Below the pieces are notes generated by a model. It did no database searches and had not been told where the DNA came from. It saw only the letters and a list, made by a program, of their open reading frames with translations. Below, piece after piece: positions 1,848 through 35,207 of a stretch of 64,000 nucleotides of DNA (positions within the stretch are counted from its first letter, which is position 1; every line of letters begins with the position of its first letter). The position numbers and the translations under genes are program-made. The stretch is taken from positions 62,001 to 126,000 of IMG/VR virus record IMGVR_UViG_3300038441_001119; one strand, written 5' to 3'.

Positions 1848-2363
1848 TTATTTCTTGATAGTCTTGTTGGAGGTAACGGCCTTGGTGACGAGCTTGGCCA
1901 ACGCAAGAATCGAGGCAGGGGCAAGGGTCTGGCATTCCACCTTGACGGTACCGTCCGAGGCGACGACAGCCACGTAATCGCCAAGCTTCATGGTTGCCGC
2001 TACTTTGACCAGAGCGAATATAGGCACCCAGTACTTGCGCTCCTTGGCGTTCTTGAGTTCCTTCAAAAGCACACCATCTTCTGTAATGGCGTGAACCTTA
2101 TGTACCTCCTCCTCGTAGATGTAGACATCTGACGATCCGTAACCGCCGAAGCCCATGGTCTCGTTACCCCAAGCTCCATGAAGTACCACCTGATCGCCAA
2201 CCTTGAGTTTGTAGCGATTCAAGAAGACTTTGTGTACATCTTTGTAGATGGAGTTGGAATTAAACGGAGCCTTGACGTTTTTCAGTGTAACTCTTGCTGG
2301 TGCCTTTTTCTTGGCGGGTACTCTTCCTCTGCGTGACATAATGTTGGGTAAGTTTAGATTCAC
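1848..2363 (-). CDS. hypothetical protein, paralog of 2360..2836
   Basis: C-terminal DYVAVVASDGTVKVECQT aligns with DYIAEVQHDASVKVGCTT. Confidence 0.7.
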   Translation of the reverse strand: MNLNLPNIMSRRGRVPAKKKAPARVTLKNVKAPFNSNSIYKDVHKVFLNRYKLKVGDQVVLHGAWGNETMGFGGYGSSDVYIYEEEVHKVHAITEDGVLLKELKNAKERKYWVPIFALVKVAATMKLGDYVAVVASDGTVKVECQTLAPASILALAKLVTKAVTSNKTIKK

Positions 2364-2836
2364 TTAGAGGTCTTCTTGCTCATAGCAAGGGCCGCCTCGT
2401 AGATTTCCTTCAGCTTTTCGAAGTGAACGGTAGTGCAGCCTACTTTGACCGAAGCATCGTGTTGGACCTCGGCGATGTAGTCACTGTTGATTCGGATGGA
2501 TGGTCCGCGCAGCCTGAGGACGTGTGCCGGAACAGTGATGGTGGAATATCCGGAACCACGGGTAGGTACGACAACCACGCCAGTCGGAGTGATTTTGGTA
2601 ACCGTATAGGCAACCCCAGATCCGTAGGACTGTCGGCGTGAAGGTTGTCCGGGGAATCCGAGGACACCAGTTTCCCATGAGGAGGTGATCTGTACGGAAT
2701 CCTGCAGACCGATATTGGCGGCCTCCAGCATGATCTTCTGCACATCAGCGTAAGTGTTCCTCTTGGTTGTGTCGGCTTTTTTGGTTGGTGCTGCTTTTTT
2801 GGCTGCCACTTTTTTAGCGTTGGTTTTAGAAGGCAT
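2360..2836 (-). CDS. hypothetical protein with Lys/Ala-rich N-terminus, paralog of 1848..2363
   Basis: shared YxDVxK and C-terminal motifs. Confidence 0.7.
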   Translation of the reverse strand: MPSKTNAKKVAAKKAAPTKKADTTKRNTYADVQKIMLEAANIGLQDSVQITSSWETGVLGFPGQPSRRQSYGSGVAYTVTKITPTGVVVVPTRGSGYSTITVPAHVLRLRGPSIRINSDYIAEVQHDASVKVGCTTVHFEKLKEIYEAALAMSKKTSK

Positions 2837-2941
2837 TGGGTGTGTGGGTGTGTTATTTGTGGAGGGTTATACTCCAACCCTTTACTTGCAAGCTAAGGTA
2901 AAAGCAGTACCTTGCTTGCCTGTAAAAGATTCCGTGTGAGA

Positions 2942-3541
2942 TTAATAGTCGTCGTCTTCTTCTACCGGAACAGAGGTATTGAAAACGGCTTGTAATTCCT
3001 GATGCTTTTTCTTGTATCCCTCTAGGTAACCTTGTTTGTGTACCCAGCGTATATAGGAGTAGACATCGTCAGGCTGTTCCATGAAGAAGCCCGTGTGAGC
3101 GAGTATGACAAGACCGTTTAGAGCGTTCCTGAAGTCCAGAGGGCGCAGACCTTCTAGCCTCCTATTGGTAGCGAGGTCATGGACAGGATTACCTGCGTTT
3201 TCGGGAATAGGTTCGAATCCTAGTTGCTGAAATACGGTGCGCAGGCGTGTGTTGGATTCGTTGTTCCAGATAACAACATCCAAGTTGTACTGATCTTTGA
3301 TGGCGATGGCATGAGGGTACGCAACACGTACGTTGTACCCTTCAGCCCACCTTTGCTTATCTGCGTCCTGAGACGAGTAGGGGCGAAGCTGTGGTTGTAT
3401 TTGGCGCAGCATTGCATCAGCCTGCTGTCCTTCTGGAATAAATGCCAGCAGGAACCGAGAGGTATCCTGCGTATCCAGACCTAGGTAAGAAAAGTAAAAA
3501 CGCTTGTGCGGTCTTGGTGGGTTGACTGGTACTTCGCTCAT
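2942..3541 (-). CDS. hypothetical protein
   Basis: 199-aa ORF. Confidence 0.7.
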   Translation of the reverse strand: MSEVPVNPPRPHKRFYFSYLGLDTQDTSRFLLAFIPEGQQADAMLRQIQPQLRPYSSQDADKQRWAEGYNVRVAYPHAIAIKDQYNLDVVIWNNESNTRLRTVFQQLGFEPIPENAGNPVHDLATNRRLEGLRPLDFRNALNGLVILAHTGFFMEQPDDVYSYIRWVHKQGYLEGYKKKHQELQAVFNTSVPVEEDDDY

Positions 3542-3563
3542 GGCGGTGTGTGATTAAAAAAAA

Positions 3564-3612
3564 TGGAGGCCCCGCTCGGTTATTCACCGATTCTCAGCTA
3601 GCACACGGGACC
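3564..3612 (-). ncRNA. tRNA-like mini-RNA (acceptor stem + T-arm-like hairpin + CCA, no D or anticodon arm)
   Basis: minus strand GGTCCCG-14nt-ATCGG TGAATAA CCGAG-CGGGGCC-T-CCA, directly downstream of two tRNAs; could alternatively act as a terminator. Confidence 0.4.
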
Positions 3613-3621
3613 TTTGGAAAG

Positions 3622-3695
3622 TGGAAGCCTCGGGGCGAATCGAACGCCCATTATTGCAGTCAAAGTGCAAAGTCTTACCACTAAACGACGAGGCT
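3622..3695 (-). tRNA. tRNA-Gln(TTG)
   Basis: AGCCTCG/CGAGGCT acceptor, TTGCA-CTTTGAC-TGCAA anticodon arm, TTCGATT T-loop, encoded CCA. Confidence 0.9.
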
Positions 3696-3696
3696 A

Positions 3697-3775
3697 TGGC
3701 GCCCGCGCTCGGATTCGAACCGAGAACCTTCTAGCCTAGGAACCAGACGCCTCTAACCGTTGAGGCTACGCGAGC
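3697..3775 (-). tRNA. atypical tRNA, Arg(CCT)-like, with 8-nt anticodon loop TTCCTAGG
   Basis: GCTCGCG/CGCGGGC acceptor, 5-bp D stem, TCTGG-TTCCTAGG-CTAGA, TTCGAAT, GCCA. Confidence 0.8.
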
Positions 3776-3813
3776 GATGAAGGTGGGTAGATTCTCACCT
3801 ACCCACCTAGAAG

Positions 3814-4806
3814 TCAAATACCAAGATCGCGGCAAATTTCATTCAGGTGTGCCGCTTCATCACCCCAAGAGGCAACAACAAGCGCACCACCCTGAACAAA
3901 CTTGACGACCAAGGGATCATGGGGTACTGGAAGAATCTGTGTAGCGGATGTACCATCTTTCTTGCACCGCTCAATGAAGTCATCCTTCACGTCGAACGCG
4001 GCATTGGGAGCAAGGATGAACATCTGGTTCTGCATTGTCGTGCAGTTGGATTCCAGACGCTTGGAGTGCGATTCGAACATAGTCTCCTCGTACTCTGCAC
4101 GTCGGCGTTTGTAATCTTCGCGTTCACGTGCTGCCTCGGCACCATTGTACATGAACGAGAAATCACTGATAACGACGCTAGCGTTCTGTTTCGCTACTCC
4201 CCGTATGCGTGCCCGGTAGGTACTCATTTCCGCAGCAGCATCTGAGATACGAGGTGCGGTGCCCTTGCCCGTACTATCGCAATCCATCAGACACAGGATC
4301 TCCGCCTTGTTCACATTGTGCACAGGCTGAAGCTCGAATGCCTCCATATAGCCCAACTGACTTGGCGGGACGGCGCCCCGGTAATGGTTGAGCGTATCTG
4401 TGTGAAGGTTCAAGGCTTTGCGAACAGCGTGGAATCCAGCCCAAGGGAGGAACCGGCTATTCGGGTAGTCCTTTTCATACTTCTCACGGAGATGAGGATA
4501 CTCAAGGAAGGACGAACGGAAGGCAGCGAGACGGATGTCCGAGGTCTTGGTGAACCCAAGTTTCTCAGCACGTTTCGCATTCTCCTGATCGACGAGAAAG
4601 GAAGGCGAAGTGGCTTCCTTGACATTGCGCTCAACGAAAGCGGCAATGGTTTCAGTGCTCTTGCGATCAAGAACAGCAGTATTGGATGGTTCCATTTGTG
4701 GATGAAGTGGTTCGATGTGTTCGAAAGTGTCAAACAAAAGGTCGTAGGGATCTGCACTCAGATCTGCCCATGCCTCCATGATGGCGTCAAGAGAATCAGA
4801 GTCCAA
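3814..4806 (-). CDS. hypothetical protein, paralog of 4796..5683
   Basis: shared YPxSRF(L/I)P, YxGxVP and DPLVxxFVxGGALxVASWGDEA motifs. Confidence 0.8.
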   Translation of the reverse strand: MDSDSLDAIMEAWADLSADPYDLLFDTFEHIEPLHPQMEPSNTAVLDRKSTETIAAFVERNVKEATSPSFLVDQENAKRAEKLGFTKTSDIRLAAFRSSFLEYPHLREKYEKDYPNSRFLPWAGFHAVRKALNLHTDTLNHYRGAVPPSQLGYMEAFELQPVHNVNKAEILCLMDCDSTGKGTAPRISDAAAEMSTYRARIRGVAKQNASVVISDFSFMYNGAEAAREREDYKRRRAEYEETMFESHSKRLESNCTTMQNQMFILAPNAAFDVKDDFIERCKKDGTSATQILPVPHDPLVVKFVQGGALVVASWGDEAAHLNEICRDLGI

Positions 4807-5683
4807 GTTCGTTGACTACGCCGTTAATGAATTCCGCCTCATCACCCCAAGAGGCGACGATAAGGGCACCGCCGGGAACAAAACGGAGGACGAGTGGATC
4901 CTTTGGGATCGGGAGCTTCTGGGTGGAAGCATCAACCTGTTCACGGAAACGCTTGACGAAGTCCTTGTCCTTGGTGAAGGCTGTTGGAGGAGCCACCACA
5001 AAGAACTCAGACCGGAACTGTTCGAAGAACTTGTTGAATGGCTTCAGATGGACTTTCATCCAACCCTCCTTGTTGACGGAGTTCGTAAGTTTGCGGCAAT
5101 CCAGCTCGCCGTTGAAGCAATCACGATTCTCGCTCATGATCCGGTTGAACGCCGTAACCGAAATACGACCGAAGTTGACATCGACGGTATTCTTGATGTC
5201 CTCGATCATCTTCTTGTGTGCCTTTTCGCACGCTTCTTGGTCCATCTCGAACTGTATGGGTGCGAGACCTGCCAGATGGTAGAGACCCTTCGTGTCAGGG
5301 AAGTCGCGCTCCTTGAGTTCGAAGTCGGTGATCAGTTTTGCCTGACTATCAGGAACACCACCTGCGTAGTATTCCGCCAAGTCGATGCTGAGCTTCATCG
5401 TGCTGATGGTAGCCAAAAGACCAGCCATAGGGATGAAACGGGAAGTAGGATACTTCGCGAGGTAGTGCTCGCGAAGTTCCGGATTGGCGACAAACTTACG
5501 ATGGAAATCGTTGAGTTTGATGGAAGCCGAGGATTTGAATCCGACGGCTGCGAGACGGTTGCACATCAGGGTTTCTTGGTGGAACCCCTCCGAGCGACCG
5601 TACACTTCGTAGTGGTTGATGAAACTGTCGATACGATCTGCTGAAGTGCCGACGGTTTTTGGATCAAGTGTTGGAGTTTGCAT
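4796..5683 (-). CDS. hypothetical protein, paralog of 3814..4806
   Basis: same motifs as neighbour. Confidence 0.8.
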   Translation of the reverse strand: MQTPTLDPKTVGTSADRIDSFINHYEVYGRSEGFHQETLMCNRLAAVGFKSSASIKLNDFHRKFVANPELREHYLAKYPTSRFIPMAGLLATISTMKLSIDLAEYYAGGVPDSQAKLITDFELKERDFPDTKGLYHLAGLAPIQFEMDQEACEKAHKKMIEDIKNTVDVNFGRISVTAFNRIMSENRDCFNGELDCRKLTNSVNKEGWMKVHLKPFNKFFEQFRSEFFVVAPPTAFTKDKDFVKRFREQVDASTQKLPIPKDPLVLRFVPGGALIVASWGDEAEFINGVVNELGL

Positions 5684-6233
5684 CTGGTAGTGTGGATCTA
5701 ATTAAATCCCGCACTTCCATCAGAATAAACCCGAGGTCATTTTCCCCGGGCCATTTCTCTGGTGAACGTGCATCGGGATGATCTGCAAGAAGACCCGTCC
5801 CATACCGTGTGTCGGTAGGATGAGCCTCGACGATAATGCTATCTCCCGTGTCCAGTAGATAGGACTGCAGGAGAGGATGCTGGGTGAACTTTTGCAAGTT
5901 CGCATGTGCGATGAATCCCCTATAAACGATATCCCATGCATTCTGTTCAAAGCCTTTGACCTCACGACCAATGGCTTTGATTTTCTGGGAATCGGGTTCC
6001 GCGAGAATACGATCCGCAGCTTCGTTGTCTCCGAAAAACCTCGCTTTCATCCACAGCATCAAATGCTTGGCTGATGCGAAGGTGATACCGGCATGTGTAA
6101 CATCGCATTGGAATCCCTGTGCGAGACAGGCATTGTCCAATTCGACGGGACTGGCAAGCTTGCTGCCGTAAAAGAAGGTGAAACTTGGTGTCTCACCTTC
6201 TTGCATTCTTCTAATCAATTTAGCCTTGTTCAT
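5664..6233 (-). CDS. NADAR (YbiA-like) family protein
   Basis: KARFFGD, KAIGREV, KFTQHP.L..YLLDTG, EAHPTDTRYGTG, GENDLGFILMEVR. Confidence 0.85.
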   Translation of the reverse strand: MNKAKLIRRMQEGETPSFTFFYGSKLASPVELDNACLAQGFQCDVTHAGITFASAKHLMLWMKARFFGDNEAADRILAEPDSQKIKAIGREVKGFEQNAWDIVYRGFIAHANLQKFTQHPLLQSYLLDTGDSIIVEAHPTDTRYGTGLLADHPDARSPEKWPGENDLGFILMEVRDLIRSTLPDANSNT

Positions 6234-6273
6234 GGTGGTTTCTGTTGGTAACGTTGGTTACGTTGGTTGGAAA

Positions 6274-6549
6274 TTAATCGTCGTCCATATGTTTGGTGGA
6301 CTCTATATGCCTGATCTCCTGCATTGTTTTTGCGTGGAGACTGTTGGGGTTACCTGCTTGCCTTGGATTACGACACATGGAGCAGGAGCAGGGTTTCCTG
6401 TTCTTGTGAAGGATAACAGCTCTCCGATGGATCTGTTCTGGAGTAAGCGATTTGAAGTAACGGTTGTTGATCTTCTCAAACTCCTCCATCCGGGCTACCA
6501 TCCGTTTTCGCTGATGGCGACGAAACGCTCTTCCGTATTCCGAGGACAT
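6274..6549 (-). CDS. small basic Zn-binding phage protein
   Basis: PCSCSMCRNPR motif. Confidence 0.65.
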   Translation of the reverse strand: MSSEYGRAFRRHQRKRMVARMEEFEKINNRYFKSLTPEQIHRRAVILHKNRKPCSCSMCRNPRQAGNPNSLHAKTMQEIRHIESTKHMDDD

Positions 6550-6551
6550 AT

Positions 6552-6938
6552 TTAGTCGAAGCTACCACCGCCTCCACCACCAGAGTCACCCCCGCTGAAA
6601 CTAGACCCGCCGCTATCGTAACTAGAACCGCCACTGCTATAGCCGCCGCTATCGTAACTAGAACCGCCGCTGTAATCGCTAGGCACAAAAGAAGTGCCAG
6701 AGCTATCACTATCATGCAGGGAAGAGCCAGAATGATGACCAGAATCTGAAGGGGCTTCGGGAGATCCTTCAGTTTTGTCTGATTCTTTGTGGTGGTGTCC
6801 TGACTCTGTGTGGATGAAGACAGGTACGTAGGGAGGGTGATACGATTCGGGTGACGGGGAACTGAATCCATGGTTACGACGGGGTGGTTGGTTCTGTTTC
6901 TTTTTGGAACCGAACAAGCGGTTGAAGGGCCAGATCAT
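6552..6938 (-). CDS. Gly/Ser-rich hypothetical protein
   Basis: low-complexity SGGSSYDSGG tail ending GGGGGGSFD. Confidence 0.7.
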   Translation of the reverse strand: MIWPFNRLFGSKKKQNQPPRRNHGFSSPSPESYHPPYVPVFIHTESGHHHKESDKTEGSPEAPSDSGHHSGSSLHDSDSSGTSFVPSDYSGGSSYDSGGYSSGGSSYDSGGSSFSGGDSGGGGGGSFD

Positions 6939-7164
6939 GTGTTTTGTTAATGGGTATGTATTGTGAACGCCAAGTGCACTTCAGATTGAAGCACAAGTAG
7001 TAACTGCCTGTTTTCATTTTCTCCATGAAGAATGCTTTCTCTTTGCATTCCGGACAATCGATCATGAAACAGGAGGGACAGACGTGCCACTTCTGCTTGG
7101 CGCATCCGGGTTTTAGTCCTCGCTCTCTATCGCAGAAGATACAGGTGGTGGGTTCTCCTTCCAT
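6874..7164 (-). CDS. Cys-rich (zinc-finger) hypothetical protein
   Basis: several CxxC pairs; overlaps both neighbours. Confidence 0.5.
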   Translation of the reverse strand: MEGEPTTCIFCDRERGLKPGCAKQKWHVCPSCFMIDCPECKEKAFFMEKMKTGSYYLCFNLKCTWRSQYIPINKTHDLALQPLVRFQKETEPTTPS

Positions 7165-26152: not shown

Positions 26153-26227
26153 TGGTACCCCGTCTAGGAATCGAACCTAGATCTACCGCTTAGAAGGCGG
26201 CTGCTCGATCCATTGAGCTAACGGGGC
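26153..26227 (-). tRNA. tRNA-Arg(TCT)
   Basis: GCCCCGT/ACGGGGT acceptor, GCCGC-CTTCTAA-GCGGT, GGAT D-loop, ACCA. Confidence 0.92.
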
Positions 26228-28806: not shown

Positions 28807-28980
28807 TTATACCTTTGCGAGCTGTGCGAGACGCTTGTCACGCTCCCGTGCAATCCGACGTTTCGACTTTGCGGAGACGAATTCGTAGGTTTTGACTTTG
28901 GCGAAGATAGCCTCCACTTCTGCGGGGGTACTTGCTTCTTGGATTTGCTTGCGGGTGCTCTTTGAATGGGTGTTGGACAT
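28807..28980 (-). CDS. 57-aa basic protein (below ORF-track cutoff)
   Basis: MSNTHSKSTRK..RLAQLAKV. Confidence 0.5.
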   Translation of the reverse strand: MSNTHSKSTRKQIQEASTPAEVEAIFAKVKTYEFVSAKSKRRIARERDKRLAQLAKV

Positions 28981-29021: not shown

Positions 29022-30686
29022 TCACAGGCTTTGAAGGTACTGCCCGATGGCAGCTGCATTCTTGCCCATGATCGGACTGTTCTTCGTGTCGTACATTACC
29101 GTTTGCTGGATGAAGCGGAGAGCTTCTTCAGCGCCTTTGCGGAGATGCTTGTTCTCAGAATCGGAATGCAGCGTAAGCATGCGGTCGATCATGAGACGAG
29201 ATTGATCTGAAGGCTTATTCAGCTGCGGCAGACTGTTGAGGGTCATTGCAATGTCCTTGTGGGTAGCGACACCCACTTCTGGAAGAACATTGATCATGTG
29301 CTGCAAACCAGAGATGGCTTCGTAACGCGACAGGGAAAAGCGCGACGACACTTCGAGGAAGAGGTGTGGAATCTTCCAGTCGGCGGAATTGATAGCTTCG
29401 TTGTTGTCAACGTCGGTATCAATAGTCGTCGCCGAATCTGTTCCAATAGGCTTCCCATTGCGAGTAATCATCGATTCCGAGATCCCCGTCACGATAGTCT
29501 TTGGGCGAGCGGGCACGCCACCCGCGCCTCCGGAAGGATAGGATGAACCATGACCACTGTAAGTCGTTCCTCCACTATAGCGACCACCTTGGCCTCCTCC
29601 GTAGTAGTTGCCACCACCATGATGGCTGGAATAGTTTGACTTTACTTCGGTGATACAGTCTTTCCACTCTTCGGGGAAGCCCTCGTCCTTGATGTGGGTT
29701 ACCCAGTGCAACGACAGCTTCTCGCGGACTTCCGCAGGAAGGGAGGCATCCCAACCGGGAACTGCGATGATGTGACCGAAGTCCTTCACCGGTACCAGCT
29801 CGGAGTTCGCAGGCAGAACGCGGTTACCTTGGTTGTCATACTCCGCAGACATCTTCACCCGGATACGGGCATGGATGTCGATAGGATACACAGCCATCTT
29901 GCCGACGGTGATATGGAAGCCCTGCTTGGTCGTCTCGTCGTCCTTGTCGGTCGCAGAGTCGAAAGCGCCCATATGAACGTGGTTGTGGGTTGTACCGTGC
30001 CAGTCACCGGAGTTGACGCCAAACTGCTCACGCAGCTTTGCGAACACTTCAAGGTTCTCCTCGGTCTCGTAATCCACCTTGACCGTCATTGCTCCACGTG
30101 TGATGCGCTGATGGAATGGGAAGTGGATGTATGCACCAGCCTCAGTGAGAAGGTGCGAGATGTGGGTCTCGGCGTTGTAGGTCTTGACCGACCAGATGTG
30201 GTACGCCACGATCTGTTTCCAGTCGTCGTACGTGATCTTCGGAGCGAGGATCTTCAGCTCCGGAGCTGCTGATTCCATGTTGAAACCAGCCGGTGGCGTT
30301 TCAGTCCACCCACGGAAGAACCTGTTTTCACGCGGAGCATAGAGCTTGCTGCCGCTGATCCGCAGACCACCTGCAGGCATTGCGACCTGTACGTACCGTG
30401 GATCCTCTTCTTCTGGGGCTGGTTCGGACGTAACAGTGATTACCGGTTGCTTGGCAACTGCAGCCGTTGAGGCTCCTGCTGTCGGCGGTACCATCGGGTT
30501 GACGCGCACTGGTTCTTCCGGGTTACTGAGGTCTGCGTTGGCAATGGCTTCGTCAACAGTTCGATTGGTGTTGTTACCCTTACCTCCTCCGCGAGGACCA
30601 CCTTGGTTCCGTTTGGACTTGTCGATGGTCTGGCCTTGCCCGCCCTTTCGGTTGGACCCTCCTTTGTTGTGATTGGTTTTGGCCAT
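29022..30686 (-). CDS. JAB/MPN+ metalloprotease-domain protein (Prok-JAB, PRTRC protein A-like)
   Basis: upstream AETH, GTTHNHVHMGAFDSATDKDDE (HxH-x7-S-x2-D), GFHITVG; start MAKTN. Confidence 0.8.
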   Translation of the reverse strand: MAKTNHNKGGSNRKGGQGQTIDKSKRNQGGPRGGGKGNNTNRTVDEAIANADLSNPEEPVRVNPMVPPTAGASTAAVAKQPVITVTSEPAPEEEDPRYVQVAMPAGGLRISGSKLYAPRENRFFRGWTETPPAGFNMESAAPELKILAPKITYDDWKQIVAYHIWSVKTYNAETHISHLLTEAGAYIHFPFHQRITRGAMTVKVDYETEENLEVFAKLREQFGVNSGDWHGTTHNHVHMGAFDSATDKDDETTKQGFHITVGKMAVYPIDIHARIRVKMSAEYDNQGNRVLPANSELVPVKDFGHIIAVPGWDASLPAEVREKLSLHWVTHIKDEGFPEEWKDCITEVKSNYSSHHGGGNYYGGGQGGRYSGGTTYSGHGSSYPSGGAGGVPARPKTIVTGISESMITRNGKPIGTDSATTIDTDVDNNEAINSADWKIPHLFLEVSSRFSLSRYEAISGLQHMINVLPEVGVATHKDIAMTLNSLPQLNKPSDQSRLMIDRMLTLHSDSENKHLRKGAEEALRFIQQTVMYDTKNSPIMGKNAAAIGQYLQSL

Positions 30687-30690
30687 GGTA

Positions 30691-32121
30691 TTAGATGAAC
30701 TGCGGAGTAAGCTGATCGGGTTTGAAGGTATTGATTGCCAGAATTTTGCTATGAGCTTTCTCAAAGGCTACGATAGGTTGAGGATCTTTCGGATGTGCGG
30801 CAGCTGCAAATTCCGCGAAATGCTTCGCAGCAGTTGCATCACGCAGGTGTATCCCTGCATGAGAGTTGTCACCAGTAGCACTGATGGTCGAGGTGAATGA
30901 CGTGGGACTCACGTTCTTGGAAGTGTGCGTAGGGAAGTACATCACACCATAGAAGAACGGGCCGTCGATCCACTGATTGAAGAACTCCTGTGCGTAACCC
31001 CAGAGGGCTTCGGCGTTCAGGATGTCTCCGGGCATCTTGTTGATCGCAGTACTGTTTTGAGCCGTGAGGATCGAAAGCTGATACGAACTGTCATACGGAG
31101 CACGTTGAACGCTGCGAATCCTGATGGCACCACGAGTAGTACCCTCTTGGGAGAGAGGGCCGCCCAGCATCTTCTCGATACCGACGCGTGTGGCTTCTTG
31201 GAAAGTCGCAGCACCACCTGCAGAGGGTACAACGAGGTACGATACCGACAGCGAGACCATCTTGGGCTTGAACGCAGGTGCGTCCCAGATGGACCGCGCC
31301 ATGTTCTTGTTGATAGTCATCTGTGAAACACCGCCTCCAACATCCCCAAACAGAGTGGAGAGACGCTGAGAACCAGCGATGGAGTGAGTGATACCAGCGA
31401 GAGGTGAGTTCTCGAAGATGAAGATCGGACGCAGCAGGGCGACGATAAACTTCCGTGAATCCGCCGGACCATAGTAGACACCGTTGGTAACAGGGATGGT
31501 TGCCTGAATGCAGTCAGCGATAGCCATCTTGGTCTCGCTGTTGCGGAGGGCCAGAATATGAGAGATATCCTGCAGAATGTGGGCTGGAGCACCCAGACGA
31601 GCGCGACCTTGGTCACCCCCACCTGTACTGGCAGAATTCTTCAGCATTCGCAGCATGTTCTTGTTAGCGTCCTCCTTTCTACGCAAGAACGAGAATTTTG
31701 GAGATTCGTAAACTTCCATGAGATCTTTGTGGGTGATCTCATCGAACTTCGTATTCATGAATGCGGCAGCAGCTGGTTCCCAGCTTTGCTGAATCATGCG
31801 GGCGACAACCTTGGAACGGAAGTCAGCGCCGTAGGCAGTAGGCTCTGGGACAAACGCAGGGATGTCTGCAAGGGGAATACCTTGGATGGCGTCGGTAGTC
31901 GAGGTAGTCCACGTGCCGCTGCTGAAGGTCAGGAGACGAACAGGCGACCCACTAGAACCGACGATTGTCGAGGTTACCGGGGGAGTCGGGATCGAGAACT
32001 GCCAAGCTGGAGCTGGAGTGGCTGGAGGTGGCGGAGTTTCGACTGCTGCAGCGGCTGGGGCCTTGTCCTTTTTGGCTGCAGTTTTGGTTACCCTCTTGGT
32101 GGCTTTCTTGGTAGTACTCAC
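30691..32121 (-). CDS. hypothetical protein inside the Ubl operon
   Basis: 476 aa, overlaps the E1 stop; no recognised domain. Confidence 0.75.
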   Translation of the reverse strand: MSTTKKATKRVTKTAAKKDKAPAAAAVETPPPPATPAPAWQFSIPTPPVTSTIVGSSGSPVRLLTFSSGTWTTSTTDAIQGIPLADIPAFVPEPTAYGADFRSKVVARMIQQSWEPAAAAFMNTKFDEITHKDLMEVYESPKFSFLRRKEDANKNMLRMLKNSASTGGGDQGRARLGAPAHILQDISHILALRNSETKMAIADCIQATIPVTNGVYYGPADSRKFIVALLRPIFIFENSPLAGITHSIAGSQRLSTLFGDVGGGVSQMTINKNMARSIWDAPAFKPKMVSLSVSYLVVPSAGGAATFQEATRVGIEKMLGGPLSQEGTTRGAIRIRSVQRAPYDSSYQLSILTAQNSTAINKMPGDILNAEALWGYAQEFFNQWIDGPFFYGVMYFPTHTSKNVSPTSFTSTISATGDNSHAGIHLRDATAAKHFAEFAAAAHPKDPQPIVAFEKAHSKILAINTFKPDQLTPQFI

Positions 32122-32837
32122 GTCAGTTTCACTTCAGTTGCTTCTTCATGCACTTCCGCTTTCGGGGCTTCCATTGGAATATCCTTGAAGCGGACACTGG
32201 TGACACCGTTGCGGGTGCCCTTGATTTCTGCTGGCACATTCTCCAGACTTGCGCAACGCTGCAGAGCATTGAACAGCCAGAGCATGAAGCTACCAGCGTT
32301 GTGGTTGGCAATCGGCAGTTGAGGTGCTGACTCGATTGCTTCGACGGTATTGCAGCTTTCGCCGGGGCCACGACCATCAGGGACGATGTTGTGGCGCACG
32401 TATGGGTCGCGATAGGTATCACCCCATTCCGGTATGAATAGGTATGCCTCGGGGTCTTCTTCTTCATTGGCACCCCAGATGATCGGGATGTCCATGCGTT
32501 CCGCGATCTTTTTCGCGTAGCAGCGTGCGTCGTGGTTGTCGACAGCCACGAACAGAATCTTGACATCGTCAGGAAGCTCGGTCATGTCGGAGATATAGGT
32601 CTCCATGCATGTGATCTTCTTGTCGGTGAACTTATCGTACATCGAGGCGTAGACTTTCGCCTTGTTTTCCGAGTCACCAAAGTGTGCGCCGATTTGACGA
32701 AGAGTATTCTTCTTCTCAAACTTGTCGCCATCGATGAGGAGCAGGTTGTGCGTCATCATGAGGGCGGGCAGGATGTGGGAGGTGACTCCTCCACAACCGA
32801 TAATGGCGATTGTATCAAAGGATCGTTCGATCTTCAT
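32118..32837 (-). CDS. E1/ThiF-family adenylating enzyme
   Basis: IIGCGGVTS, IDGDKFEKKNTLRQ, NKAKV, AVDNHDAR, ESC..PQLPIAN putative catalytic Cys. Confidence 0.88.
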   Translation of the reverse strand: MKIERSFDTIAIIGCGGVTSHILPALMMTHNLLLIDGDKFEKKNTLRQIGAHFGDSENKAKVYASMYDKFTDKKITCMETYISDMTELPDDVKILFVAVDNHDARCYAKKIAERMDIPIIWGANEEEDPEAYLFIPEWGDTYRDPYVRHNIVPDGRGPGESCNTVEAIESAPQLPIANHNAGSFMLWLFNALQRCASLENVPAEIKGTRNGVTSVRFKDIPMEAPKAEVHEEATEVKLT

Positions 32838-32846
32838 GAGTGGGTG

Positions 32847-33062
32847 TTACAGAGACTTGGACTGGTAGGTGGGGTTGTGTTTAGCAAAGATATCCCCGAG
32901 GATGCGGAGAGTTTTGCTAGGGATTTTGGGTGCTGGTTTCGGAGTCGTGAACTCCGTGATTCCTGCGGACAGGATATCAGCTGCGGCTTTGTCAGTGGGG
33001 GCTGCGCGGGCTTTAGCTGCTAGTGCGAGGAAGAAATCCCCGTCTTTTTTCTTAGCTGCCAT
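32847..33062 (-). CDS. small hypothetical protein inside the Ubl operon
   Basis: 71-aa ORF between E2-like and E1 genes. Confidence 0.55.
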   Translation of the reverse strand: MAAKKKDGDFFLALAAKARAAPTDKAAADILSAGITEFTTPKPAPKIPSKTLRILGDIFAKHNPTYQSKSL

Positions 33063-33065
33063 TTA

Positions 33066-34016
33066 TCAATCCCAGATAGGAGGGAGGGTTGCGGTGACCG
33101 TGCGAGCAATGGTTTTGGGGAACACAATGTGTAGATAGGGAGCAAGATCCCCTTCGTCAGCAATGCGTACTTCAGCGGTCATACCTGTCATCGTCTTGGA
33201 GACATCGAGGTTACCGGGAGATTCTTCGAGGTCGATGAAGACGTCGTTGAGACCGCGTGGTCCGAAAGCACCACGGGAAACCTGCGGGGACATACAGATG
33301 CGCCCGTCGTCGAAGATGTTATAAAGCGGAGGCTGATACAGGCGCTTGGTGGACTGCTCGACCATGTAGATGTACTGGGAGACATATCCCGGTTCACTGC
33401 GAGAACCAGCCTGCTCGGGATGGCTCTGACGTTGAACGAACATCACTTTGTCAAAGCCACACTCCTTGGCATTGATCGCGCACTTCCAGTTCATGGAGTT
33501 CTGGTTGAGATAGTGTCTGGAGTACTCCAGACCACCGCGATCCATATTGCTGGTGTATGGCTTGAACTTGATGGTTTTCGAAGCACCATCCCAGTAAGGA
33601 ACAAATGCACCGTTCCAAGTGCAGTAGTCCATGATCCAGATCTGCCAGATTTCACCGGCACGTTTCCACATCGACCATTTGATGTCTTGTGCGACACCAT
33701 CCACCTGAACCATCCGTTCAGTGGCCCTCATGATAGGTTCGAATGTGTCGCCACCAGTGATGTGCGAAGCGGCGATCTGTTCCACTTCCTCAATGGTGAT
33801 TTTGGCAAGGGTGAACTCACCGGGTTTGACCGATGGCATGAAGGCCATCATTGACGTTGCTGGTTTGTCCACTCCGATCACGAAACTACTCGCAGCAGGA
33901 CGCTGGATAGCTTCATAAACGATTGCATCGCCAGCAGGCGGTGCAGGTGGCGGACCTCCAGCGATATCAGCTGCGACTGCGGCAGCTTCTTCTTGTGGGG
34001 CAGCGGTTGCGCTCAT
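33066..34016 (-). CDS. prokaryotic E2-like protein (E2 family D / PRTRC protein B-like)
   Basis: LYQPPLYNIFDDGRICM matches the PxxNxxxxGxIC E2 active-site pattern. Confidence 0.7.
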   Translation of the reverse strand: MSATAAPQEEAAAVAADIAGGPPPAPPAGDAIVYEAIQRPAASSFVIGVDKPATSMMAFMPSVKPGEFTLAKITIEEVEQIAASHITGGDTFEPIMRATERMVQVDGVAQDIKWSMWKRAGEIWQIWIMDYCTWNGAFVPYWDGASKTIKFKPYTSNMDRGGLEYSRHYLNQNSMNWKCAINAKECGFDKVMFVQRQSHPEQAGSRSEPGYVSQYIYMVEQSTKRLYQPPLYNIFDDGRICMSPQVSRGAFGPRGLNDVFIDLEESPGNLDVSKTMTGMTAEVRIADEGDLAPYLHIVFPKTIARTVTATLPPIWD

Positions 34017-34032
34017 TTAGGGTGTTGTAGAT

Positions 34033-34078
34033 AAAAACAAAGAAAGAGGGGTGACACACGTTTCCGCATGTCACCCCC
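34033..34078 (-). terminator. intrinsic terminator between Ubl and E2 genes
   Basis: GGGGTGACA/TGTCACCCC stem + U-rich tract. Confidence 0.6.
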
Positions 34079-34123
34079 GCAGTTTGTTGCCACCTCCGAT
34101 ATGGACTATCAAAGGTAGCCCGT

Positions 34124-34154
34124 GAGTGAGGTTCAGTCTTCCCGAACCTCACTC
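34124..34154. other. stable hairpin right after the Ubl stop codon
   Basis: GAGTGAGGTTC/GAACCTCACTC 11-bp stem. Confidence 0.65.
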
Positions 34155-34161
34155 TGGATAA

Positions 34162-34611
34162 TTATGCCAATGCCTTGGACGAGGCGACGGTTTGGACAGT
34201 GATGACATCACCGGCCGAAAGCGTCACGTTGGATTCAGAGCCGTTGACGAACACGCGGATGTTCGAAGGAAGAGCGAAGTCCTCCTTGAACTGACGGTCG
34301 TTTTGAAGCGTAGAGGTGGTGGTGCCGTACGGGACGTAGAAGTCGCTGCGGTTGCCATTGACATGGACAATCACTTTGACACGTGCAGCTGCCTTGGACG
34401 AGGCAACGGTTTGCACTTCGACGATGTCCGAAGCGGCGAGTCGCTTGTCCGCAGTAGAACCGTTAACGATAATACGGATGTTCGAAGGAAGAGCGAAGTC
34501 CTCCTTGAACTGCCGATCACTGGCGAGAGCCGAGGCGTAGGTACCGGTTGGAACCCACCAGGTGTTGGTATTGCCGTTGATTTTGACTGCGATTTTGATG
34601 CGAGCTGCCAT
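34162..34611 (-). CDS. tandem di-ubiquitin-like (beta-grasp) protein
   Basis: Met + two 73-aa repeats (AAR..VQTVASSKA) + LA; hydrophobic strands, VNG motif and L..GD.(I/V) pattern typical of ThiS/MoaD/Ubl. Confidence 0.8.
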   Translation of the reverse strand: MAARIKIAVKINGNTNTWWVPTGTYASALASDRQFKEDFALPSNIRIIVNGSTADKRLAASDIVEVQTVASSKAAARVKVIVHVNGNRSDFYVPYGTTTSTLQNDRQFKEDFALPSNIRVFVNGSESNVTLSAGDVITVQTVASSKALA

Positions 34612-34760
34612 ATAGGTGGTTGTGTCTGTGTAGTGTGGTGTGCTCCTTGGAGCGGTATATATACAGACGCTCTCCCCTACAGGAGATGTTTTTAAAATGC
34701 CAACCACATGATGCCGAAAGTAATCCTAGAGGATTAAGTGCTTACGCACTCTATAGCAGC

Positions 34761-35207
34761 TTAGGCAGCAACCTTTGGAGTAAGGTCGATGAACTGAGCG
34801 GCGGCGCCAATTCCATGGCTGGTGATGATTTCGCGAACACGTCGCTTGCCGCTAATGGAGAGACCGCGAACGGGGTTCCAGTAGTAGCCAGTGTCGTGTA
34901 GCTGCGTCAGATCCCGGAGGAATCCAACGGGAAGGTCTGCGACGGCGTGGTGCAGGTAGTGGCGGTATCGAGGCGACAGCAACGATTCAGCACCAAGACC
35001 TGAGCCATTCACACCGTCGGCCAACATCTGCTCAACGTCGGCGAATCGTCCAAGAGCGCAACACTCACCCTTCAGGTTGAAGAGTTTGTTAGGCACCCGA
35101 CGCTTGGTATCCGCACCGTAATGCGAGATGGTGTCGTCGAGGGCATGCGCCATACGATGGGATTGAGGAATTTCGGAGCTGTAGCAAGGGGCGAGATTTA
35201 GAGCCAT
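34761..35207 (-). CDS. hypothetical protein
   Basis: 148 aa; CCALGR and LTQLHD motifs. Confidence 0.7.
   Translation of the reverse strand: MALNLAPCYSSEIPQSHRMAHALDDTISHYGADTKRRVPNKLFNLKGECCALGRFADVEQMLADGVNGSGLGAESLLSPRYRHYLHHAVADLPVGFLRDLTQLHDTGYYWNPVRGLSISGKRRVREIITSHGIGAAAQFIDLTPKVAA

What the first reader, a model, noticed from the sequence alone, without database searches (positions are those of the whole stretch)
34162..34611. Polyubiquitin-style precursor whose units end in SSKA, not GG
Seen: the protein is exactly Met + 73 aa + 73 aa + Leu-Ala. Both units begin AAR(I/V)K, share DRQFKEDFALPSNIR and end VQTVASSKA, while other positions have diverged. Established: eukaryotic polyubiquitin is a head-to-tail precursor with a short C-terminal cap removed by a protease, and E1s normally adenylate a C-terminal Gly. 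Inference: the JAB cleaves after SSKA to release two different modifiers with a C-terminal Ala, i.e. a non-glycine Ubl chemistry with two surface variants.
Basis: partly seen in the sequence, partly recalled or inferred. Interest (0 to 1): 0.8.

Follow-up and report, generated by a model that had tools for sequence, protein, structure and literature searches.

The report
Phage poly-Ubl precursor ending in Lys-Ala
An uncultured soil jumbo phage encodes two ubiquitin-like units joined head to tail, each ending in Lys-Ala rather than Gly-Gly, next to its own E2, E1 and JAB protease genes: probably a virus-borne protein-tagging system with an unusual C-terminus.

Summary
ORF 34611..34162 (-) is Met + 73 aa + 73 aa + Leu-Ala. 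The units are 62% identical (BLASTP 2e-34) and both end VQTVASSKA. AlphaFold gives two beta-grasp domains on a disordered SSKAA linker, and the best PDB matches are ISG15, linear di-ubiquitin and polyubiquitin.

The gene heads a conserved phage module: Ubl, terminator, E2-like protein (PxxN-x7-Cys241), single-domain ThiF-type E1 (invariant Cys162), a fast-evolving 476-aa protein, and a JAB protein (HxH-x7-S-xx-D).

The 19 relatives recovered carry 1, 2 or 3 units. Nearly every unit ends A-x-x-K-A, and these are the three most conserved columns of the family. After the last KA comes nothing, or a variable cap (A, V, L, W, IA, LA, NS, VIG, RAA, up to 36 aa). Every internal junction is KA|A. More distant E2-JAB-E1-Ubl loci end in KG or KA.

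The mature C-terminus is therefore very probably Lys-Ala, with Ala standing in for Gly. Cleavage and conjugation are inferred, not shown.

An Ala C-terminus already has a precedent in CBASS cGAS. This is a new variant of a known kind.

The parts
34761..35207 (-). Conserved gene of about 145 aa directly upstream of the Ubl gene. Function unknown; it may or may not belong to the module.
   Evidence: Homologues (25-43% id) sit next to the Ubl gene in L011, L008, L004 and L012. No Pfam, PHROG, PADLOC or NCBIfam hit.
34162..34611 (-). Poly-Ubl precursor, 149 aa: Met, unit 1, unit 2, Leu-Ala cap, stop.
   Evidence: AF2 mean pLDDT 80.7 with two beta-grasp domains. Foldseek best hits are ISG15, linear diUb and polyubiquitin, E about 1e-7. 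Sub-threshold MoaD, ThiS and SAMP1 hits.
34390..34608 (-). Ubl unit 1 (residues 2-74), ending VQTVASSKA. Predicted mass 7819.8 Da if released.
   Evidence: The linker, residues 71-75, has pLDDT below 50.
34171..34389 (-). Ubl unit 2 (residues 75-147), ending VQTVASSKA. Predicted mass 7889.7 Da if released.
34165..34170 (-). C-terminal cap Leu-Ala, predicted to be removed.
   Evidence: Caps in relatives are absent or variable: A, V, L, W, IA, NS, VIG, RAA, RKARKDRK, or 36 aa.
34017..34161 (-). Structured intergenic region with three hairpins. The last one (34047-34078) is a 14-bp GC-rich stem followed by a U-tract, i.e. an intrinsic terminator between the Ubl and enzyme genes.
   Evidence: terminator scan. 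MFE -72.5 kcal/mol, z = -9.4. A comparable hairpin plus U-tract follows the Ubl gene in six related loci.
33066..34016 (-). E2-like protein, 316 aa. Motif P230-x-x-N233-x7-C241 (PLYNIFDDGRIC, 33294-33329), with Cys241 the predicted catalytic residue.
   Evidence: P230, N233, C241, P267 and N269 are invariant in 7 orthologues. Pfam Prok-E2_D 18.1 bits on residues 222-242, below the cut-off of 25; 2 of 7 orthologues hit it. NCBIfam PRTRC_B hit is weak. All top Atlas feature hits are Prok-E2_D. The AF2 model is poor (pLDDT 49.6).
32847..33062 (-). Small ORF (71 aa) between the E2 and E1 genes. A small ORF is called at this position in the six related loci with gene calls there (44-131 aa; none in L011), but the sequence is not conserved.
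32118..32837 (-). E1: a single-domain ThiF-type adenylating enzyme, 239 aa. Adenylation motifs are intact, and Cys162 (32352-32354) is invariant, 62 residues after the invariant Asp100.
   Evidence: Pfam ThiF 3.6e-14. Invariant G14-G17, D36, D38, N44, R47, Q48, K59, D100, N101, R105 and C162 in 12 sequences. Best solved relatives are MccB, TcdA and SUMO E1 UBA2. Weak PADLOC hits to CBASS E1-E2.
30691..32121 (-). 476-aa protein of unknown function, always between the E1 and JAB genes and evolving fast (12-22% id). Candidate substrate or specificity factor.
   Evidence: the Atlas capsid-like features are a lead only. No family hit.
29022..30764 (-). JAB/MPN+ metalloprotease protein. The ORF from TTG is 580 aa; the likely start is Met27 at 30686. 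Zinc motif H260-x-H262-x7-S270-x-x-D273 (29946-29987), an upstream conserved Glu (AETHIS), invariant Trp182, and a long variable Gly-rich C-terminal half.
   Evidence: Invariant columns. Atlas: Prok-JAB and PRTRC_A clusters by features (0.94) and by structure (TM 0.54-0.69). One orthologue hits Pfam Prok-JAB at 1.1e-4.
28807..28980 (-). Conserved small protein (57 aa) directly downstream of the JAB gene. Function unknown.
   Evidence: 30-35% id to ORFs at the same position in L011, L005 and L004.

Best explanation
This is a phage-encoded ubiquitin-like conjugation module whose modifier is made as a head-to-tail polyprotein. Shown: the gene encodes two beta-grasp units with no linker, each with a flexible tail ending Ala-Ser-Ser-Lys-Ala. 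A conserved terminator follows the gene, and then come genes for an E2-like protein with an invariant Cys, a ThiF-type E1 with intact adenylation motifs and an invariant Cys, an unknown fast-evolving protein, and a JAB metalloprotease with an intact zinc site. Inferred: Met1 is removed, because Ala is at position 2 (the standard Met-aminopeptidase rule). The JAB cuts after each Lys-Ala, between the units and before the Leu-Ala cap. That releases two monomers of about 7.8 kDa that both start with Ala and end with Lys-Ala. The E1 adenylates the C-terminal Ala and takes it onto Cys162. The unit passes to E2 Cys241 and then to lysines of phage or host target proteins not yet identified. The JAB can also reverse the linkage. 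Ala plays the role of the usual terminal Gly. The tandem copies and the terminator supply modifier in excess over the enzymes; the copies are not two designed variants.
For: Fold: AF2 pLDDT 80.7 with two beta-beta-alpha-beta-beta domains, and the linker (71-75) and tail disordered. Foldseek gives ISG15, di-ubiquitin and polyubiquitin at E about 1e-7. Mature end = KA: the three most conserved columns of 26 non-redundant units are K73, A70 and A74. Proteins ending exactly at KA are P0020, P0027, P0029, the partial gene ends at L002 and L005, and the distant locus L016. Caps elsewhere are not conserved. Precursor: 1, 2 or 3 units. Of 13 internal junctions, 12 read KA|A and one reads KTA|T. Each downstream unit starts like the N-terminus after Met. 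Internal tails are kept even where units have diverged to 44-47% (P0016, P0019, P0021). Enzymes. The order Ubl, E2, E1, X, JAB is conserved in L002-L005, L008, L009 and L011, with the E1 at 48-57% id. A terminator follows the Ubl gene in all loci examined. G/A interchange: distant E2-JAB-E1-Ubl loci end GRKG*, GQKG|DRR, GDKG|L and GTKA*. Precedents: an Ala-terminated cGAS is conjugated by Cap2 (PMC10097602); JAB enzymes process Ubl precursors in Bil and Bub (10.1101/2023.09.26.559546; PMC11601596).
Against: There are no biochemical data, and no transcript or proteome data; no RNA run was listed. The E2 fold is not confirmed, because the AF2 model is poor (pLDDT 49.6) and its Foldseek hits are meaningless. 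All E2 and JAB family hits for the window proteins are below curated thresholds. Known bacterial Ubls with 2-3 beta-grasp domains (Bil, Bub) act as uncleaved multidomain proteins (PMC11601603), so internal cleavage is not a given. Targets and biological role are unknown. The high DNA identity of the two tails could partly reflect recent gene conversion rather than selection in this particular gene.
Confidence: 0.55

Rival explanations
1. The protein is an uncleaved two-domain modifier, like ISG15 or BilA. Only the Leu-Ala cap is removed, and the whole 15.7-kDa di-Ubl is conjugated through the C-terminal Ala of unit 2. The internal SSKA is just a linker left over from duplication.
For: The best structural matches include ISG15. 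Bacterial Ubls with two or three beta-grasp domains are common and are reported as intact proteins (PMC11601603). The high DNA identity of the two tails fits recent gene conversion.
Against: Internal tails keep the full A-x-x-K-A motif even in proteins whose units have diverged to 44-47%, and in a 21%-identical middle unit that still ends EEKA. There is no linker at all, and each downstream unit begins like a mature N-terminus. Copy number varies from 1 to 3 within one family, including single-unit proteins with the same tail. The AF2 linker is disordered and there is no confident inter-domain packing (pTM 0.45).
Confidence: 0.22
2. It is a sulfur-carrier or peptide-modification system (ThiS/MoaD-ThiF, CysO-Mec+, QbsE-QbsD or MccB type). 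The E1 adenylates the tail to make a thiocarboxylate or a modified C-terminus used for a phage-specific small molecule, or for tRNA or DNA modification, not for protein tagging.
For: The Ubl has weak MoaD, ThiS and SAMP1 similarity. The best solved relative of the E1 is MccB, which adenylates a non-Gly C-terminus. JAB trimming of sulfur carriers is known (recalled from memory: QbsD, Mec+). The phage carries tRNA genes.
Against: An E2-like protein with an invariant Cys in a PxxN-x7-C motif is always present. No rhodanese, cysteine desulfurase or biosynthetic enzyme was found among the neighbours scanned. Sulfur carriers end in Gly-Gly and are not known as tandem precursors.
Confidence: 0.08
3. 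The tandem beta-grasp protein is a structural or assembly protein (for example a decoration, or a tail-assembly factor like lambda gpI). Its neighbourhood with the E1, E2 and JAB genes has no functional meaning.
For: Lambda-type tail assembly protein I has a Ubl domain next to a JAB protein (PMC1779556). The gene has its own terminator, as highly expressed structural genes often do.
Against: The same gene order is kept in at least seven divergent loci, and the four components co-occur in a different order in distant MAG loci. The most conserved part of the protein is its disordered tail, not a surface or the core. The module lies among replication and transcription genes, not virion genes.
Confidence: 0.05

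Closest known systems
Eukaryotic polyubiquitin precursor (UBB/UBC/UBI4 type)
   Same: Head-to-tail beta-grasp units with no linker. A short variable C-terminal cap. Variable copy number. Units homogenised within a gene (concerted evolution). A flexible tail that is the most conserved element.
   Different: No detectable sequence homology to ubiquitin (14-16% id in structural alignments, no Pfam ubiquitin hit). The tail ends Lys-Ala, not Gly-Gly. Units in this gene have diverged to 62%. The predicted processing enzyme is a JAB metalloprotease encoded in the same operon. It is encoded by a bacteriophage.
PRTRC cassette / Iyer-Aravind operon type 6d (JAB-N+JAB, ThiF-like E1, Prok-E2_D, small Ubl) on conjugative elements
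   Same: The same four components. The E2 matches Prok-E2_D and PRTRC_B at the active-site segment. The JAB resembles PRTRC_A by features and structure. Distant relatives of the E1 sit next to JABs that hit PRTRC_A at 1e-11.
   Different: All scores are far below the curated cut-offs. The type 6d Ubl has a conserved C-terminal Gly (PMC1779556), whereas here it is Lys-Ala and tandem. The gene order differs, no ParB-like partner was seen, and the host replicon is a jumbo phage. PRTRC itself has no characterised function.
Type II CBASS Cap2/Cap3 conjugation of cGAS/CD-NTase
   Same: An E1/E2 cascade plus a JAB protease acting on a C-terminus that is Gly or Ala. An Ala-ending cGAS (E. cloacae) is conjugated, and Gly-to-Ala is tolerated (PMC10097602). 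The E1 has weak PADLOC hits to Cap2.
   Different: Cap2 is an E2-E1 fusion and the 'modifier' is an enzyme with no beta-grasp fold. Here E1 and E2 are separate, the modifier is a small tandem Ubl, there is no CD-NTase, and the system is phage-borne rather than a host defence.
Bil (BilABCD) and Bub bacterial ubiquitination-like systems
   Same: A Ubl with one to three beta-grasp domains, an E1, an E2 and a JAB peptidase that pre-processes the Ubl C-terminus (10.1101/2023.09.26.559546; PMC11601596; PMC11601603).
   Different: Bil and Bub Ubls expose a conserved Gly; in E. aridi BilA the terminal Ala98 is a cap removed after Gly97. The Bil E1 is a large IAD-AAD-CYS protein, and Bub uses oxyester intermediates without an E1 Cys. 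Multi-domain Ubls there are reported as intact proteins. These systems are bacterial and anti-phage. Here the E1 is a minimal 239-aa domain with a conserved Cys, the motif is KA, and the system belongs to the phage.
ThiS/MoaD/SAMP sulfur carriers with ThiF/MoeB
   Same: A small beta-grasp protein with the ...NG...GD.I.V... pattern and a ThiF-type adenylating enzyme. Sub-threshold MoaD, ThiS and SAMP1 hits.
   Different: No Gly-Gly. An E2-like protein is present. The architecture is tandem. No sulfur-donor genes are nearby.

Membership tests
Ubiquitin-like beta-grasp modifiers used by E1/E2 cascades | Beta-grasp fold | tested here: met
   AF2 pLDDT 80.7, with two beta-beta-alpha-beta-beta domains. 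Foldseek prob 1.00 to ISG15, diUb and polyUb.
Ubiquitin-like beta-grasp modifiers used by E1/E2 cascades | Flexible C-terminal tail ending in Gly (usually Gly-Gly) | tested here: not met
   The tail is flexible but ends Lys-Ala in both units and across the family. Distant relatives end Lys-Gly or Lys-Ala.
Ubiquitin-like beta-grasp modifiers used by E1/E2 cascades | Encoded with an E1 adenylating enzyme and an E2 with a catalytic Cys | tested here: met
   ThiF 3.6e-14 with intact motifs. E2-like PxxN-x7-C is invariant. Synteny holds in at least 7 loci.
Ubiquitin-like beta-grasp modifiers used by E1/E2 cascades | ATP-dependent activation and isopeptide conjugation to targets | not testable with these tools
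   Needs biochemistry or proteomics.
Polyubiquitin-type precursor | Head-to-tail identical-register units without a linker, plus a C-terminal cap | tested here: met
   M + 73 + 73 + LA. Relatives have 1-3 units and variable caps.
Polyubiquitin-type precursor | Sequence homology to ubiquitin | tested here: not met
   No Pfam ubiquitin hit even at E = 10. 13-16% id in the Foldseek alignments.
Polyubiquitin-type precursor | Proteolytic release of monomers | not testable with these tools
   Inferred from the retained internal tails and the JAB gene in the operon. No experiment.
PRTRC / operon type 6d | E2 scoring as Prok-E2_D / PRTRC_B above the curated cut-off | tested here: not met
   Prok-E2_D 18.1 bits against a cut-off of 25. 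PRTRC_B 14.4 against 131. The Atlas hits favour a distant relationship.
PRTRC / operon type 6d | JAB scoring as PRTRC_A; E1 scoring as PRTRC_ThiF | tested here: not met
   The window JAB has no NCBIfam hit. The E1 scores 17.2 bits against PRTRC_ThiF, cut-off 144.75. Structural similarity to PRTRC_A clusters is TM 0.54.
PRTRC / operon type 6d | Small single Ubl with a conserved C-terminal Gly | tested here: not met
   Tandem units ending Lys-Ala. The Gly is the feature described in PMC1779556.
Type II CBASS (Cap2/Cap3) | E2-E1 fusion protein acting on a CD-NTase | tested here: not met
   E2 and E1 are separate genes. No CD-NTase or other CBASS component among the seven module proteins scanned with PADLOC.
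Type II CBASS (Cap2/Cap3) | Substrate C-terminus conserved as Gly or Ala | tested here: met
   KA in the family, and KG or KA in distant loci, compared with PMC10097602.
Bil (BilABCD) | [quoted passage not shown] | tested here: not met
   The E1 is 239 aa with a single ThiF domain. The feature is as described in PMC11601596.
ThiS/MoaD sulfur carriers | C-terminal Gly-Gly, no E2 partner, and a score above the family cut-off | tested here: not met
   moaD_arch 22.9 bits against 49.5, and thiS 13.6 against 37.45. The tail is KA and an E2-like gene is present.

The most novel reading that the evidence does not exclude
A clade of uncultured jumbo phages carries, in its conserved core genome, a complete ubiquitin-like tagging system of its own (poly-Ubl precursor, E2, E1, JAB). 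The modifier is a beta-grasp protein activated through a C-terminal alanine. The phage uses it to tag host or phage proteins during infection, for example to disarm host defences or to control its own assembly. That would be the viral mirror image of the bacterial Bil, Bub and CBASS systems, and the first beta-grasp Ubl family with an obligate non-glycine reactive end.
Probability: 0.45. Interest if true: 0.85.

Novelty: new variant of a known kind. Interest (0 to 1): 0.72.

Why it matters
Prokaryotic ubiquitin-like conjugation has so far been characterised as a bacterial defence against phages (CBASS Cap2, Bil, Bub). This module sits on the other side of that conflict. It is syntenic in every related phage contig recovered and lies beside the phage's RNA polymerase genes, so the virus itself appears to tag proteins.

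The family also relaxes the textbook rule that a beta-grasp modifier needs a terminal glycine. An invariant Lys-Ala tail, interchangeable with Lys-Gly in distant relatives, would extend the Gly/Ala tolerance seen for cGAS to true Ubls. It would also define what the E1 pocket and the JAB S1 site must accommodate.

There is a practical consequence. Because Lys is penultimate, trypsin should leave a single-Ala remnant (+71.04 Da) on modified lysines, a ready proteomic handle.

Finally, the family independently reproduces the polyubiquitin gene design: linker-free repeats, variable caps and concerted evolution. That bears on why this design arises.

Tried and rejected
- **Megablast of 10 kb against GenBank phages:** no match.
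- **tblastn of the Ubl against phages:** no match.
- **tblastn of the E1 against phages:** only a weak hit, in Salmonella phage Arash.
- **Word-indexed protein searches:** for the Ubl and the E2 these found only the proteins themselves. The exhaustive HMMER search was needed to find the Ubl family.
- **IMG/VR and JGI metagenome scans:** these returned only the source contig.
- **PHROGs and PADLOC:** nothing for the Ubl, E2, JAB or the 476-aa protein.
- **PDB profile search with the JAB alignment:** nothing.
- **AF2 of the E2 with a 7-sequence alignment:** pLDDT 49.6. Its Foldseek hits (Kir channels, spike, adenovirus knobs) are meaningless and were discarded.
- **Atlas capsid-like features for the 476-aa protein:** only 4 of 10 hits are consistent, so this is kept as a lead only.
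- **RNA runs:** none was listed. The DNA runs are soil metagenomes.
- **Canonical PRTRC protein C:** I tried to fetch one from plasmids for a direct tail comparison. This led instead to a JAB-ThiF pair on a 266-kb Sporosarcina plasmid with no annotated Ubl, so I rely on PMC1779556 for the type 6d Gly.
- **Ubl near the E2-JAB-E1 trio of phage Arash:** none found.
- **Terminal Ala as a one-residue cap (as in E. aridi BilA, Gly97-Ala98):** considered and rejected. Here the Ala is invariant while real caps vary, no Gly precedes it, and distant relatives have Gly at exactly that position.
- **'Two conserved surface variants':** considered and rejected.
Full report
**1. Observation**

Translating window:34162-34611 on the minus strand gives a 149-residue protein. 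It parses exactly as Met, 73 residues, 73 residues, Leu-Ala.
- The two units align without a gap at 45/73 identities (BLASTP E = 2e-34).
- Both start AAR(I/V)K, share DRQFKEDFALPSNIR and end VQTVASSKA.
- DNA identity is 66%, lowest at third codon positions (52%), so the copies are old enough to have diverged.
- However, 25 of the 45 identical residues use identical codons, against about 16 expected. A 12-codon block is identical at the DNA level. That looks like patchy gene conversion.

**2. Where the window comes from**

The window matches the 212-kb contig IMGVR_UViG_3300038441_001119 at 100% identity over the genes tested; the same genes also lie on the JGI record Ga0247822_10000002, 212,409 bp. 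The runs that hold it are soil metagenomes.
- Almost all long ORFs are on the minus strand.
- There are tRNA genes, a split multisubunit RNA polymerase beta subunit, an ATP-dependent ligase, a helicase and phage ATPase families.
- The nearest cultured phages by RNAP beta are Salmonella phage Arash and Vibrio phages, at only 32-33% identity.
- Nothing in 50,697 GenBank phage records matches the region at the DNA level or matches the Ubl protein.

This is an uncultured jumbo phage.

**3. The fold**

AlphaFold2 on the single sequence gave mean pLDDT 80.7. The model has two separate beta-beta-alpha-beta-beta domains. The segment 71-75 (SSKAA) is below pLDDT 50, and the C-terminal tail has low confidence.

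Foldseek against the PDB returned ISG15, linear di-ubiquitin, Naegleria polyubiquitin and other tandem Ubl proteins, at E about 1e-7 and probability 1.00. The low TM-scores (0.35-0.45) are what a flexible two-bead model should give. Sequence profiles see only sub-threshold MoaD, ThiS and SAMP1 similarity.

**4. The neighbourhood**

Reading downstream on the minus strand:
- **Structured intergenic region.** It is 145 nt long, with three hairpins (z = -9.4). The last is a 14-bp GC stem with a U-tract.
- **316-aa E2-like protein.** The only invariant block among seven orthologues is P230-x-x-N233-x7-C241 (PLYNIFDDGRIC), followed by SPGN. From memory, the Asn-to-Cys spacing equals that of the HPN...C motif of UBC enzymes. 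Pfam Prok-E2_D and NCBIfam PRTRC_B hit exactly this segment but below threshold. All top ESM-Atlas feature hits are Prok-E2_D clusters, many of them viral. The AF2 model was too poor to confirm the fold.
- **Small ORF with no sequence conservation**.
- **239-aa ThiF-type E1** (Pfam 3.6e-14). In 12 sequences it has invariant GCGG, DGD..E..N..RQ, K59, VDN..AR and Cys162, which lies 62 residues after Asp100. From memory, that spacing matches the crossover-loop cysteines of ThiF and MoeB. Its best solved relatives are MccB, TcdA and UBA2.
- **476-aa protein with no detectable family**, only 12-22% identical among orthologues.
- **JAB protein.** H260, H262, S270 and D273 are invariant (HxH-x7-S-xx-D), with an upstream AET Glu. 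It resembles Prok-JAB and PRTRC_A clusters by features and by predicted structure (TM 0.54-0.69). The Atlas record starts at Met27, which would place the start at 30686 rather than at the TTG at 30764.
- **Further conserved genes.** A 57-aa ORF follows the JAB gene, and a gene of about 145 aa precedes the Ubl gene.

**5. Relatives**

E1 homologues at 48-57% identity lie on phage-like contigs with the same gene order: Ubl, E2-like, small ORF, E1, a protein of about 400 aa, a JAB protein of about 500 aa, then RNAP beta a few genes further. In every locus examined a strong hairpin with a U-tract follows the Ubl gene.

The exhaustive HMMER search with the Ubl found 19 proteins including the query. 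Cutting them into units shows the following.
- **(a) Copy number.** It is 1 (P0024-P0027, P0030, L004), 2 (P0001, P0014, P0016-P0019, P0021) or 3 (P0015, P0029, P0031).
- **(b) Unit ends.** Nearly every unit ends [A/S]-x-x-K-A. K73, A70 and A74 are the three most conserved columns of 26 non-redundant units, ahead of any core position.
- **(c) Caps.** After the last KA the protein either stops (P0020, P0027, P0029, and the gene ends at L002 and L005) or carries a cap that is not conserved: A, V, L, W, IA, LA, NS, VIG, RAA, RKARKDRK, or 36 residues.
- **(d) Junctions.** Of 13 internal junctions, 12 read KA|A and one reads KTA|T. First units start M-A. After Met removal, every unit in most of the two-unit proteins (this one included) would start with Ala and end with Lys-Ala.
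- **(e) Exceptions.** The three family members without the motif (P0022, P0023, P0028) are single Ubl domains. Two of them are fused to other modules, so they are probably not conjugatable.

**6. A wider circle**

Scanning one genome per species with the E1 profile found five loci at 27-33% identity in MAGs (Uhrbacteria, Saccharimonadia, Planctomycetaceae and unclassified bins).
- Each has a JAB, and four of these JABs hit PRTRC_A at 1e-6 to 1e-11.
- One has an upstream protein with the motif PAFPNIYND..KIC.
- Four have a Ubl that the unit profile recognises. These end GRKG*, GQKG|DRR, GDKG|L and GTKA*.

So the terminal residue after the invariant Lys is Gly or Ala, again with optional caps. 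This is the strongest evidence that the Ala is the reactive residue, standing in for the canonical Gly, and is not a cap.

The opposite case exists in E. aridi BilA, where Ala98 is a cap removed after a conserved Gly97 (10.1101/2023.09.26.559546). Here no Gly precedes the Ala, and the Ala is invariant while true caps vary.

**7. One modifier in several copies, or two variants?**

In a unit tree, the units of one protein cluster together for P0001, P0014, P0015, P0017, P0018, P0021 and P0031, and for the two conserved units of P0029. Only the first units of P0016 and P0019 group across proteins.

Unit identity within a protein ranges from 100% (P0015, P0018) down to 44%.

Together with the identical-codon blocks, this is concerted evolution or repeated duplication, as in polyubiquitin genes. 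With the conserved terminator, the simplest reading is dosage: more modifier than enzyme. It may or may not matter in this particular phage.

**8. Mechanism**

*Shown:*
- the fold;
- the tail conservation;
- the precursor architecture;
- intact E1 adenylation motifs;
- invariant Cys in the E1 and in the E2-like protein;
- an intact JAB zinc site;
- conserved synteny and the conserved terminator.

*From established knowledge:*
- Met excision before Ala.
- E1 adenylation followed by a thioester relay to the E2.
- JAB enzymes that pre-process Ubls and reverse conjugation: BilC (10.1101/2023.09.26.559546), the BubCD JAB domain cutting BubAB after Gly229 (PMC11601596), and Cap3 (PMC10097602).
- E1/E2 conjugation of an Ala-terminated substrate. 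cGAS in Cap2/Cap3 operons ends in Gly or Ala, and the E. cloacae protein ends in Ala and is conjugated. A Gly-to-Ala mutant still forms the thioester, whereas Ser, Val, Arg and Trp do not (PMC10097602).

*Inferred:*
- The JAB cuts after each KA.
- The E1 charges the Ala.
- The E2 transfers the unit to lysines.
- The 476-aa protein may be a substrate or a specificity factor. Its fast evolution would fit a host-facing role, but this is speculation.

The biological role is open. The module is syntenic in every related locus recovered and sits among transcription and replication genes, which argues for a function in the phage's own programme or in host takeover rather than a sporadic accessory gene.

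**9. Comparison with what is known**

Tandem prokaryotic Ubl domains "reminiscent of poly-ubiquitin" were noted in 2006 (PMC1779556). Bil and Bub Ubls with two or three beta-grasp domains are described as intact proteins that can form filaments (PMC11601603).

The component set and the weak profile hits place this module nearest the PRTRC / type 6d cassette, which has no characterised function and whose Ubl has a C-terminal Gly (PMC1779556). All curated thresholds are missed by a wide margin, so I do not file it as a member of that family.

I found no paper describing a phage-encoded Ubl-E2-E1-JAB module or a beta-grasp Ubl with a Lys-Ala end. The library does not cover subscription journals, so this is an absence in what was searched.

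**10. Verdict**

The core of the interpretation (a poly-Ubl precursor and an Ala-terminated modifier) is well supported by comparative evidence but untested biochemically. The "two variants" part is not supported.

My estimates:
- about 0.75 that this is a conjugation system using a C-terminal Ala;
- about 0.55 for the full model including internal cleavage;
- 0.22 for an uncleaved di-Ubl.

It is a new variant of a known kind. The phage ownership and the non-Gly beta-grasp tail make it of real interest.

Noticed in passing
window 3697-3775, 9124-9199, 9214-9291 (all - strand): ARAGORN calls three tRNA-like genes with unassignable four-base anticodons (ccta, gaaa, tttg), next to normal tRNA-Gln (3622-3695) and tRNA-Arg (26153-26227). 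They could be odd or frameshift-suppressor tRNAs, or false calls.
   Followed up: no
window 34017-34161 (- strand); L011:5765-5857, L008:8191-8310, L004:6775-6920, L009:8454-8524, L002:107-252, L005:79-135: The spacer after the Ubl gene is strongly structured (three hairpins, z = -9.4 in the window). In every related locus it ends in a GC-rich hairpin plus U-tract. This is a conserved terminator or attenuator between the modifier and its enzymes.
   Followed up: partly
L022 (Salmonella phage Arash OQ632216.1): 1519-2274, 2261-3499, 3499-4539: A cultured phage has an E2-like (LPFPNQYGDGNMC, gp248c), JAB (HSHNTMGAFFSGTD, gp247c) and E1-like (gp246c) trio. They are annotated only as hypothetical or structural proteins. 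gp248c and gp246c carry the record's MS-based 'structural protein' label (PMC10585845). No Ubl was found nearby.
   Followed up: partly
L015, L016, L018, L019 (MAG contigs; about 3300-7000 in each locus): Distant E2?-JAB(PRTRC_A-like)-E1-Ubl loci occur in CPR and other MAGs. Their Ubls end ...KG or ...KA, with or without short caps. Whether these contigs are cellular, prophage or mis-binned phage was not checked.
   Followed up: partly
L021 (Sporosarcina psychrophila plasmid pSP10-266k NZ_CP146247.1): 4569-6511: A JAB-ThiF pair, with a possible E2-like ORF at 2317-3405, sits beside DNA polymerase III gamma/tau and delta' genes and a 5'-3' exonuclease on a 266-kb 'plasmid'. This may be a phage-plasmid carrying a related system.
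   Followed up: no
window, 30 nt upstream of 28 minus-strand start codons (e.g. 34612-34641, 34017-34046, 32838-32867): Most genes lack a Shine-Dalgarno sequence. Several upstream regions are A/C-rich (ACAACACC-, ACACCC-like), which suggests SD-independent initiation in the unknown host.
   Followed up: no
window 30691-32121 (- strand): The 476-aa protein between the E1 and JAB genes evolves very fast (12-22% id among syntenic orthologues). The ESM-Atlas feature search places it near viral capsid-protein clusters (score 0.94), but the hits are inconsistent. This is a lead only.
   Followed up: partly
P0022, P0028 (proteins): These family members lack the KA tail and are fusions. One is a zinc-ribbon + Ubl + long C-terminal region (386 aa). 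The other is a Ubl followed by about 70 extra residues that look HicA-like to me (recalled, not tested) (144 aa). The Ubl domain is therefore also used as a non-conjugated module.
   Followed up: no
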